From Paragordius varius (lineage: Eukaryota > Animalia > Nematomorpha), in assembly GCA_964247055.1 (NCBI GenBank), contig OZ176053.1, positions 10,726,001 to 10,790,000 on the forward strand: a stretch of 64,000 bases of DNA, read 5' to 3'. The first letter of the stretch is position 1. Every line of letters starts with the position of its first letter. Below the pieces are notes generated by a model. It searched no databases. It saw nothing but the letters and a program-made list of their open reading frames with translations, and had not been told where the DNA came from. Below, piece by piece: positions 14,601-26,727 of the stretch. Made by a program: the position numbers and the translations under genes.

Positions 14601-17600
14601 CTTTCTAACCGTAAATATGGGTACGTAAAATATTTAATTGTTTTTGTTATCTACCGTCAATTATCTAATAAAGGATTTGAGTACGCGTGATAATGCAAAT
14701 TTGTTATGTTTTTGACTTTTAATGCACAGATATTCCAGAACGTCCTAGTAATCGTCCATTTGCTAAACGGAACAGTTCATATCGTGGGAAATTGAATAGG
14801 TTAAACGGTAATAAGCGCGCAGATAACATTAATATCATGGAGAAAACACCTAAACTCAATAAAGAATTCACATTTAGAGTGGCACTCATGGCTGTTACAG
14901 ATTTATCGCCGGAATTCGCTGACATATTTTGCCAATTTAAGTATGTGAAATTGAAAAATTTTAAATATTTTTAATTTGATATCTTATCAACTGCTCTTTA
15001 TTAGTTTCCTGCATAAACCGGAAGAAGCATTTTCCACAGAACCTTTCAAAAATGATTGTCATTCCAAATCCAATCAACAAGAATGGCCAGATTTTTACCA
15101 TGTCCAATATGTTAGTTTATAATAAATTATAATTATATGGTGCTAATAGAAAAAGATTTATAAATTGTTTTAATTATTTTTACATAAAATTATTTCTTAT
15201 TTTATAGATAACCGTTACTGTCTCAGATTATTTTATTGAGTATATTAAAAAGCATCCAGTAATATTCGAAGTGTTCGGACACTCCAAACTCAATTTCAAA
15301 GAGAACGAATTTCTATTTCCATCCACTCTCGTGGAGGAGAATCAAAATGAATGGTATATTCATGAATTATTGGCATTAAATTTTTTTTAACTCAAATATA
15401 GGATAAAACCGTTCAACATGCCTACACGCTTTTTCCCTTACAATTGCATTCCAGTATCGAGACCAGTACCACCCTCTAGTATATCAATCGATCCCGGGAA
15501 AGTTGCAAATTTTGGGTATATCATTTATATTTTGCAATGTTATATTTTATAATTCAATATATATATATATATATATATATATATATATGTATGTATAAAA
15601 TGATAGAACTGCATTTTCAACCAAATGTGATGTACTGGTTTGGATAGAGATTTTGGAATTAGCCGCAAACGGAGAGTAATGATTATTTTTATTCTCTATG
15701 GGTTTAAGTAAAAGTATTAGAACAAAACAAACATAATATGAGATTTGATTAATTTCTTAGGTACATTCCAGCTCAATTTCAACCTTGTGATACATCTTCC
15801 CTAAATTCTTCTCCCTACACTCAACCTAGTCATCGGGGTCGTTTTTGTCTACAACAAGGGATCCAAAGACGGCTGGCATTCACTTTAATCGTTCAACATC
15901 CCATGAATGGTGATTTAGAATCAGTTGACAATGTACACTGTCAGGATCAGGCTAATGGGATGTTTGGTAATAGCTCCAACAAAACTAACATAAATAATCA
16001 TCCGATGAAAAACATCTCACCATGTTTCAACGATTCCACCATGAAATGTATTATTTTTTTATTTGGTCAAAATCATCATTAAATGACACAACTGAGTCAA
16101 TTGAATTTATTTTGCGGATACAGATCTTATTTTTTCATAAAATTTTAAAACTGAATAATATCATTACAACCTGTAAGATAAATGTTACACGTCCATCCGC
16201 TTGAGAATGCAGTGATTGCGGTTATAGGCAGTAAATTACTATGTTGTGTTTAGACAAAAATTATTTGAAGTAAATTGCGGAAATAGTCAAAAAAAATCAT
16301 AGATGTTCACATAAAAATTAATTTTTTAAAATTCTACAACAGTGGACTCACCAAAAAATTTAGAATGACCGAATCTTTTCTCAGCCGTCCATATAATACC
16401 GACATATATTGAACAGCTCTTTGATACATATGCAGTCATTTATACCTTAAATAACTACCTAAATAATAAATGAATAATATAATGGCCATAAAAAGCATTT
16501 TTAAAACCACATCCGGCCCGTGGGCTGCGGTTTGAGCTGTTCCACAATATTATATCATGCAATGATCATAGGTAAAGATTGGTAATTATTGAGAGCGTTA
16601 GCAGTCTTGAATGTATTCACAACCGGTGAGACCCAACCATACTTGTTATATTTTCGTACCTTGTTTTCAATAGTCTTAAAAATCGTATACTAATATAGAT
16701 TATTTGGGAAAAATACTCCAGTGGTTAATATCAAGCAAAAGCATGATGCGTATATAGGAATGATTGGAACATAAATTTAATATTCATGTTTAATGTATAC
16801 CATTTCCCAGTTTAAATAAACGTTTTCCCAGTCAATCGAAATATTTTCCCAATCAATCGAAACGTTTTCCTATTCAATCGAAATGTTTTCCCAGTCAATC
16901 GAAACATTTTCCCAGTCAATAGAAACATTTTCCCAATAAATAAAAACGTTTTCCCAGTCAATAAAAACGGTTTTATTTTCGAAAATATCAAAACAAGAAA
17001 ATAAAAACAACTTTTAACCATTAATAGCGTAATATATGAAGATAATTTTTAATTAAAAACACAATTATTAAATGACAATTTTTCCAAATATTTTCTAGTG
17101 CACAATTATTAATGACTTATTTTTGAAATGTTATATTTTTGGAATTTGAGTTAAGATAATATTTTTTATTTTATCGATGGTTCTCATTAGTATATGCGGC
17201 TAACTTAAAAAATCTATAGTTACGGAGGAATTAATAAAATTTATAAAAACATACTATTTTTATCACAAAGGTCATTTAACACCTTATATTGGATCTTAAA
17301 CATAAATTTTACCCTAATTTTATAATATTTAACATTTATTTTGGGGGCCTAAGGCGGCCTTCCGAGTATGGGCCGCAAAAAATTTGCAAAACCATATGCA
17401 AAAATATGCCCACAAAATTTGATAAAATTCATATTTCTTACGCAATTATTATGAATGAATATATTAAATTGGTAATGAATTAAAAAAATTATATTGTGTT
17501 TGTATTTTACAATCTTATTAATCGAAAAATTATGTGAATGCCCGTATATATATTTTGAATGGGGAACCGTGTGCTTTTTGAGTTTAAAATGCGGCCCCCG

Positions 17601-25932: not shown

Positions 25933-26727
25933 CCATTTACACTTCAAGAGTGTCCTTAAACAATTCAAGTTGGTCCTTGAACAATTCAAGTTGGTCCTTG
26001 AACAGTTCAAGTTGGTCCTTGAACAATTCAAGTTGGACCTTGAACAGTTCAAGTTGGTCCTTGTACAATTCAAGTTGGTCCTTAAACAATTCAAGTTGGT
26101 CCTTGAACAATTCAAGTTGGTCCTTAAAATTTATAAATTTTGATTTAACCATAATTTTTGCATTTATTTATTTATTTTATTATTTATTTACCTAATTTTC
26201 TGTATTTATTATATATTTATTCTTTTAAAAATAAAATTTATTATTGAAAAACGACTTTTTTTGTTTAAAACTATTTTTTTTCAATTCAACAAAATTATTG
26301 ACTTTTAGATGTTTTTAATAAAAAATTTTAATTTATAACCCAGAAAACTTATATAATTTTTCATTTCATGTAAAAATATTATAAATATCCAAATTTATTT
26401 TAAGAAATTAATAAAGATATACGGTTTTTCAAAGATTAAAAGTTGATATCGATTTAAAATTTATGTTAAATAATAGAAAATAGGTTAAAAACAATAAAAT
26501 AGACGAATTATTTTCGATTTGATTGATAAAAGTTAAAAACAAAGCAAAAAAGTTAAAGGACCAACTTGAATTGTTCAAGGACCAACTTGAATTGTTCAAG
26601 GACCAACTTGAACTGTTCAAGGACCAACTTGAATTGTTCAAGGACCAACTTGAATTGTTCAAGGACCAACTTGAATTGTTCAAGGTCCAACTTGAATTGT
26701 TCAAGGACACTCTTGAAGTGTAAATGG
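25933..26727. mobile_element. Foldback/MITE element C with 21-bp terminal arrays
   Basis: Unit CCTTGAACAATTCAAGTTGGT, 8 copies left and 7 inverted copies right; terminal 21-mer CCATTTACACTTCAAGAGTGT; flanked by TATA on both sides; about 420-bp AT-rich core. Confidence 0.93.

What the first reader, a model, noticed from the sequence alone, without database searches (positions are those of the whole stretch)
16800..26727. A foldback-element family with shared TATA|CCATTT termini and three diverged 21-bp subterminal arrays
Five elements within 10 kb (A 16800-18123, mini 18949-19138, B 20144-21899, nested C' 20768-21258, C 25933-26727) begin CCATTT and/or end AAATGG. The intact ends of A, B, C and C' are flanked by TATA. 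Each carries arrays with an exact 21-bp period (two helical turns) starting at the terminal base, but the units differ: A CATTTTCCCAGTCAATCGAAA, B CATTTTTTCAAGCAAACGCAA, C CCTTGAACAATTCAAGTTGGT. In the same register A and B are 15/21 identical, and all three keep C at 1, TT at 3-4, A at 10 and CAA at 13-15. Units are homogenised within an element while copy number differs between arms (about 7/6, 12/13, 8/7). Inference: non-autonomous derivatives mobilised by one transposase that reads the terminus plus phased binding sites, with array sequence turning over under a fixed period. I cannot assign a superfamily. TA/TATA targets suggest IS630-Tc1-mariner or CMC-type, whereas long array-bearing TIRs recall Foldback/Galileo/MuDR-type elements. 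No cognate transposase is in the window.
Basis: partly seen in the sequence, partly recalled or inferred. Interest (0 to 1): 0.85.

Follow-up and report, generated by a model that had tools for sequence, protein, structure and literature searches.

The report
TATA-targeting foldback mini-transposons with 21-base arrays
These are non-coding, hairpin-shaped jumping-DNA copies in and beside a worm's kinesin gene; three families share the same six-letter tip, landing site and exact 21-letter repeat spacing, which points to an unidentified group of related transposases rather than to a new kind of system.

Summary
A, B and C are non-coding TIR elements with TATA|CCATTT ends. The 10-mer occurs 7 times against 0.84 expected, always at an array end, and 21 bp is the only array period in the window. 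Each array is an in-phase multimer of its own terminal 21-mer, with no phase-breaking indels (0/33 versus 11/59 outside, P=0.015).

Corrections: mini has no array. C units are not significantly like A or B; only A and B units are. B is a 98.5% palindrome with a missed, decayed C-type end in each arm, so C' may be B's fixed core rather than a late insertion.

The flanking duplication is TATA or TA only, which excludes MULE/Foldback proper, P/Galileo and hAT. One transposase is unsupported; related transposases fit better. The superfamily is unresolved: TATA-targeting piggyBac-like about 0.4, Tc1/mariner/pogo about 0.3. No parent element, relative or reads could be reached.

The scan has already noted this system in many other windows of this genome. 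Verdict: an undescribed variant of foldback-type non-autonomous DNA transposons.

The parts
16800..18123 (.). Element A, 1324 bp; TIRs about 400/378 bp; unique non-coding core 17200-17745; in an unc-104/KIF1A intron
16800..16967 (+). A left array: terminal 21-mer plus 7 internal units
17977..18123 (-). A right array: terminal 21-mer plus 6 internal units
16796..16799 (.). TATA left of A (partner 18124-18127); the flanks form a 12-bp near-palindrome, 11 of 12 matching
18949..19138 (.). mini, 190 bp: decayed C-family relative, TIR about 30 bp, no array, imperfect flanks
   Evidence: fold z=-5.1
20144..21899 (.). Element B, 1756 bp: arms 20144-20767 and 21259-21899, 98.5% identical inverted copies enclosing C'; TATA on both sides; intronic
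20144..20395 (+). B left array: terminal 21-mer plus 11 internal units
21627..21899 (-). B right array: terminal 21-mer plus 12 internal units (one extra unit near unit 9)
20634..20767 (+).
   Evidence: local score 97, shuffle maximum 69
21259..21392 (-). Mirror copy of the C'' relic in B's right arm
20768..21258 (-). C', 491 bp: one-ended C-family copy (90% like C) filling B's centre; right end intact with 3 internal units; left end and array absent, flush at TATA
25933..26727 (.). Element C, 795 bp; TIR is the array only (about 190 bp); TATA on both sides; about 200 bp after the KIF1A stop codon
25933..26121 (+). C left array: terminal 21-mer plus 8 internal units
26560..26727 (-). C right array: terminal 21-mer plus 7 internal units
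2620..25735 (+). Host gene unc-104/KIF1A (approximate span); A, mini and B lie in introns that split its DUF3694 domain

Best explanation
A, B and C are non-autonomous cut-and-paste DNA transposons of foldback build, derived from a clade of related autonomous elements (at least two lineages, A/B and C). SHOWN: shared 6-bp tip; TATA on both sides in an R-TATA-T context; each arm an in-phase tandem multimer of that family's own terminal 21-mer; no phase-breaking indels; one-unit differences between arms; non-coding cores. INFERRED: a DDE transposase supplied in trans cuts at CCATTT, inserts into ATATAT-like sites and duplicates TATA. The 21-mer is one transposase footprint, and extra in-phase copies are secondary binding sites presented on the same helix face. 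The tip, target and module length are kept because catalytic geometry is shared across the clade, while the module sequence drifts with each family's DNA-binding domain. Slippage changes unit number by whole units, and arm-to-arm copying in the hairpin keeps the arms alike and lengthens the TIR. B most likely arose that way: an old C insertion (C'') inside a B element, a second C copy (C') into its TATA, then mirror-copying up to the C' boundary and loss of C's left end. Superfamily guess: TATA-targeting piggyBac-like about 0.4, Tc1/mariner/pogo with TA duplicated in a TATATA context about 0.3, other or unknown about 0.3.
For: 7 vs 0.84; only period 21; terminal 21-mer matches its own unit 14-15/21 but other families' units 8-10/21; duplication only 2 or 4 bp; first 11 nt differ by 3-4 between families; A-B P=2e-4, C not significant; 0 indels per at least 33 substitutions in arrays vs 11 per 59 outside, Fisher 0.015; decayed C'' has lost both tip and phase; (R-TATA-T 4 of 4, P=0.005; two mariner relics in the window have TA but not TATA at their four ends). 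Precedents: secondary sites, limited subfamily cross-binding, TIR extension and shared cores in Galileo (PMC3688188, PMC3573991); family-specific subterminal repeats in Aedes MULEs (PMC5225508); piggyBac tip motif fits CCATTT (PMC5381638).
Against: No transposase, empty site or second locus was seen, so binding, duplication length and superfamily are unproven. TATA was not among the targets reported for 157 piggyBac elements, and the piggyBac tip motif is so degenerate that the fit is weak. Unequal exchange alone could also purge indels. Only four insertion events are available, and one of them (C') has mirrored flanks.
Confidence: 0.6

Rival explanations
1. One reading: one transposase mobilises all families, reading the tip plus a phased degenerate core (TCAA-like), while the rest of the unit drifts.
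For: Identical 6-bp tip, target context and period; seven in-register positions shared by all three units; A and B units homologous; B physically combines B- and C-type ends.
Against: Three-way sharing is borderline (P about 0.05) and C vs A or B is not significant. Invariant columns differ between families, only positions such as 14 being invariant in all. Galileo subfamilies show that shared tips need not mean shared binding.
Confidence: 0.2
2. The arrays are by-products, not binding sites: the terminal 21 bases are repeatedly re-copied during gap repair or slippage at the hairpin end, and unequal exchange keeps units uniform; only the tip is functional.
For: Arrays are multimers of each family's own terminal 21-mer from base 1; mini exists with a C-type tip and no array; unit number varies freely (3 to 12).
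Against: It does not explain why three diverged families use the same 21 bp. No phase-breaking indels occur despite T5-T6 runs, and the internal relic C'' loses phase.
Confidence: 0.15
3. The period reflects host chromatin: A/T tracts phased at 10.5 bp that bend DNA or position nucleosomes, reached independently by unrelated elements.
For: 21 bp equals two helical turns; the B unit shows mild AA/TT phasing (P=0.09).
Against: A (P=0.38) and C (P=0.85) show no phasing above shuffles; convergence would not give the same tip and target.
Confidence: 0.05

Closest known systems
Type 2 Foldback architecture, e.g. Aedes Muta1 and derivatives (MULE; PMC5225508)
   Same: Long TIR made of a terminal motif plus tandem subterminal repeats; variable unit number; several families with different units in one genome; non-coding derivatives.
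   Different: Muta has 8-9 bp unspecific duplications and 9-15 bp units that vary in length between families; here the duplication is TATA/TA, the target is specific and the period is 21 in all three families.
Galileo (P superfamily; PMC3573991, PMC3688188)
   Same: Coexisting subfamilies with similar tips, TIR extension by recruiting inner sequence, copies whose core comes from another subfamily (like B with C'), secondary binding sites in repeats.
   Different: 7-bp duplications and long (about 200 bp) internal repeats; no TATA specificity.
piggyBac-like elements (PMC5381638, PMC5861402)
   Same: CCATTT fits the reported first-six-base motif; 4-bp palindromic AT-only target if the duplication is TATA; subterminal direct or inverted repeats that the transposase binds.
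   Different: Target is TTAA (TATA not reported among 157 elements); TIRs average 14 bp; no long phased arrays. From memory only, not verified: Repbase lists a divergent piggyBacX group that may have CC ends and a TATA target.
Tc1/mariner and pogo (Passer/Tc2-like; PMC7386202)
   Same: TA lies next to each tip; CC-starting tips exist (CCGTA in Passer, CCAGG in this window's mariner relics); some pogo elements have very long TIRs; Sleeping Beauty-type IR/DR secondary sites.
   Different: No TIR starting CCATT in the held, truncated pogo table; TA duplication would need a TATATA context in 4 of 4 sites (2.5% of TA sites), unlike the window's mariner relics.

Membership tests
Foldback-type non-autonomous TIR element (architecture) | Long terminal inverted repeats built from tandem subrepeats | tested here: met
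Foldback-type non-autonomous TIR element (architecture) | Non-coding interior | tested here: met
   no Rfam match
Foldback-type non-autonomous TIR element (architecture) | Flanking direct duplication | tested here: met
   exact at 2 and 4 bp for A, B, C', C; no empty site seen
MULE (MuDR, FB/NOF, Muta, Phantom) | 8-10 bp unspecific target duplication | tested here: not met
   definition in PMC5225508
P/Galileo | 7-8 bp target duplication | tested here: not met
   PMC3573991
hAT | About 8 bp target duplication (own knowledge) | tested here: not met
piggyBac | TTAA target duplication | tested here: not met
   TATA at all 7 intact ends; PMC5381638
piggyBac | First six bases fit the reported degenerate C-rich motif | tested here: met
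   CCATTT fits; motif is weakly discriminating
piggyBac | DDD transposase with C-terminal cysteine-rich domain; footprint-free excision | not testable with these tools
   no parent or excision site reachable; the flush left boundary of C' is one weak hint
Tc1/mariner/pogo | TA target duplication | tested here: inconclusive
   2-bp duplication is possible but needs TATATA context 4 of 4
Tc1/mariner/pogo | Known TIR end motifs | tested here: inconclusive
   0 CCATT-starting vs 196 CCGTA entries in a truncated pogo table; Tc1/mariner lists not searched
Tc1/mariner/pogo | IS630-type DDE/D transposase | not testable with these tools
   no parent element
Kolobok | TTAA duplication and purine-purine 5' termini | tested here: not met
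   (PMC9587614)
CMC/EnSpm | CAC/CMC terminus (own knowledge) | tested here: not met
   tip is CCA; the 2-4 bp duplication would be compatible
Repbase grouping rule for non-autonomous elements | Same duplication length and at most 1 mismatch in the first 11 bases | tested here: not met
   A/B/C differ by 3-4; C, C' and mini left end do meet it
Any family in Repbase or Dfam | Sequence match to a described consensus | not testable with these tools
   libraries not available; paper searches found no CCATTT or TATA-duplication family

The most novel reading that the evidence does not exclude
The elements report an undescribed transposase clade, either a TATA-specific offshoot of piggyBac or an unassigned superfamily, whose transpososome needs binding modules every two helical turns from the tip, so that module length is fixed across families while module sequence co-evolves with each enzyme. 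Its parent genes may have been missed because transposases in this genome are said to carry micro-introns.
Probability: 0.3. Interest if true: 0.65.

Novelty: new variant of a known kind. Interest (0 to 1): 0.4.

Why it matters
If the parent is found, the three array types give a natural series for asking what the tandem repeats of foldback TIRs do; PMC3688188 notes that binding to Foldback and Phantom repeats is untested. A TATA-specific transposase would also add a new target specificity. For the host, B places a 620-bp, 98.5% stem inside the pre-mRNA of a neuronal kinesin (about -977 kcal/mol vs -303 for a control of equal length), a likely double-stranded RNA substrate (inference). Without the parent, it remains a well-defined but unclassified repeat group in a little-studied genome, already noted many times by this scan.

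Tried and rejected
Other copies: exact-pattern scans for the C end, the C array and an A/B degenerate end in metagenome, viral and GTDB collections gave 0. The spurious B-array reading frame found no protein. Ten window reading frames are absent from the protein collection, and a KIF1A-specific exon gave only two chance bacterial hits, so this genome seems not to be held. A degenerate piggyBac motif scan of viral contigs gave three loci with no long matching frame. Scan notes show no CCATTT element with a transposase. Rejected: duplications over 4 bp; tandem satellite or assembly artefact (arms diverge, ends are flanked); coding role of the array frames; RNA family; shared DNA curvature; the window's mariner and hAT relics as parents (different ends). 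Noted as post hoc coincidences only: ACGCA, the piggyBac cysteine-rich-domain motif, occurs in the B unit but not in A or C; the A unit loosely resembles a CENP-B box (from memory). The Repbase classification review and two other reviews were not held.

Full report
Setting. The window is AT-rich (23-33% GC) eukaryotic DNA with short introns. Positions about 2.6-25.7 kb hold an unc-104/KIF1A gene (Kinesin and DUF3694 matches). A, mini and B lie in introns between exons matching DUF3694 positions 12-51 and 88-127, and C starts about 200 bp after the stop codon. Earlier AI notes call the host a probable horsehair worm; I could not test this.

Observation. The 10-mer TATA+CCATTT occurs 7 times on both strands, against 0.84 expected and at most 4 in 100 shuffles. 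All 7 are the outer ends of the 7 arrays. A scan of lags 10-44 finds arrays only at 21 and its multiple 42 in the whole 64 kb, and TRF reports 0% indels in each. Internal unit counts are A 7/6, B 11/12, C 8/7 and C' 3. The mini element has a C-type left tip and a short TIR but no array, a TCATTT right end and a TATT left flank; it is a decayed C relative. Cores are non-coding and match no Rfam family.

How the units relate. A and B units are homologous (14-15/21, P=2e-4). C is not significantly like either (9/21, P=0.07; 7/21, P=0.32), and the seven three-way shared positions are borderline (P about 0.05). Each family's terminal 21-mer matches its own unit (14-15/21) better than the other units (8-10/21), so each array is an in-phase multimer of the element's own tip. 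The families share 6 terminal bases but differ at 3-4 of the first 11, failing Repbase's rule for grouping non-autonomous elements (PMC4455052). In A and B, unit variants are mirrored between arms (93% and 97% in register vs 85% and 87% within an arm), so arm-to-arm copying matters more than within-array homogenisation; C is well homogenised (95%).

Is the period constrained? The arrays carry at least 33 substitution events and no phase-breaking indel, while non-array parts of the same elements carry 11 indels per 59 substitutions (Fisher P=0.015; about 6 expected). The internal relic C'' has lost both its tip and its phase. Unequal exchange could contribute, so this supports selection without proving it. 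AA/TT phasing at 10.5 bp is not shared by the three units, which argues against a chromatin-bending explanation.

Target. Exact flanking repeats exist only at 2 and 4 bp, which excludes MULE, P/Galileo and hAT. All four sites are R-TATA-T (26% of TATA sites, P=0.005). If only TA were duplicated, all four would need a TATATA context (2.5% of TA sites). Two mariner relics in the same window (one confirmed against Mos1) have TA but not TATA at their four ends. A 4-bp TATA duplication is therefore the simpler reading, but a context-strict TA duplication cannot be excluded without an empty site.

Element B. Its arms are 611/620 identical right up to C'. C' is 90% like C, lacks its left end and array, and starts flush at TATA. 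The reconstructed empty B has 13 TATA sites, and the central one is its only ATATAT, so a late insertion at the exact centre is possible. The alternative is that mirror-copying ran up to the C' boundary and C' is a fixed core; its 10% divergence from C, against 1.5% between B's arms, favours this slightly. Galileo shows both TIR extension and cores borrowed from another subfamily (PMC3573991).

Mechanism. The best reading is trans-mobilised cut-and-paste by a clade of related DDE transposases that share tip, target and footprint length but differ in binding sequence (confidence 0.6). Shown: the anatomy and statistics above. Inferred: transposase binding to units, the enzyme type and the order of events in B. 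Aedes MULE families have family-specific units (PMC5225508), and a Galileo binding domain binds one sister subfamily weakly and another not at all (PMC3688188), so shared tips do not imply one enzyme. Rivals are one transposase (0.2), arrays as repair by-products (0.15) and chromatin phasing (0.05).

Superfamily. CCATTT fits the degenerate piggyBac tip motif, but TTAA is not met and TATA was not among the targets of 157 elements (PMC5381638). No pogo TIR in the held, truncated table starts CCATT (PMC7386202). Kolobok fails on target and termini (PMC9587614), and CMC fails on the tip (own knowledge). I recall a divergent Repbase group, piggyBacX, possibly with CC ends and TATA; paper searches could not confirm this. 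I file the elements under no superfamily; they work like foldback-type non-autonomous TIR elements.

Reach of the evidence. No relative was found in viral, metagenome or prokaryotic collections, and the genome seems absent from the protein collection. The scan's notes list the same system in many other windows of this genome, with three or four families and no parent. One note gives 20-21 bp, and others describe transposases with micro-introns, which could hide the parent. These notes are unchecked leads, and I tested only what lies in this window.

Verdict. A real, apparently undescribed variant of a known kind. The fixed in-phase period across diverged families and the TATA target are the unusual points; the architecture itself is familiar. 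Interest 0.4.

Noticed in passing
window 42557-43692 (+): Decayed mariner, frameshifted, with TA-flanked ends starting CCAGGTG; one frame matches Mos1 transposase (E 5.5e-6).
   Followed up: partly
window 48575-49577 (-): Second decayed mariner-like copy with TA flanks, 73% like the first over about 100 bp.
   Followed up: partly
window about 42490-42508: A further mariner-type end (CCAGTGT on the minus strand) with a TATA flank, 50 bp before the first relic; partner end not found.
   Followed up: no
window 58900-61290: hAT-like relic: a frame at 59256-59420 resembles a hAT C-terminal region by eye (no Pfam hit), with a hAT-type end near 61260-61285.
   Followed up: no
window 46388-46930 and 62052-62200: About 540-bp element with an 18-bp inverted repeat and a TTAA-like left flank, probably a piggyBac-type MITE; a partial diverged copy (79%) lies at 62.1 kb.
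   Followed up: partly
window 16788-16799 and 18124-18135: The flanks of A are a near-perfect 12-bp palindrome, so A sits at the centre of a short hairpin; B and C flanks are not palindromic.
   Followed up: partly
window 17340-17380 and 17590-17625: GC-rich imperfect inverted pair inside A's core, possibly a decayed nested element; a similar hAT-like motif lies at 16505-16550.
   Followed up: no
window 2620-25735: unc-104/KIF1A with many 55-80 nt introns and long Asn/Ser-rich insertions that found no true relative among 1.8 billion representative proteins (one insertion tested).
   Followed up: partly
window 27200-58800: Other host genes seen by eye: vanin/biotinidase-like (27.2-29.8 kb, CN_hydrolase hit), ferritin (30.1-30.6 kb), an acyltransferase (32-35 kb), a neprilysin-like gene (43.7-48.5 kb) interrupted by repeats, and a DEAH helicase (53-58.8 kb).
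   Followed up: no
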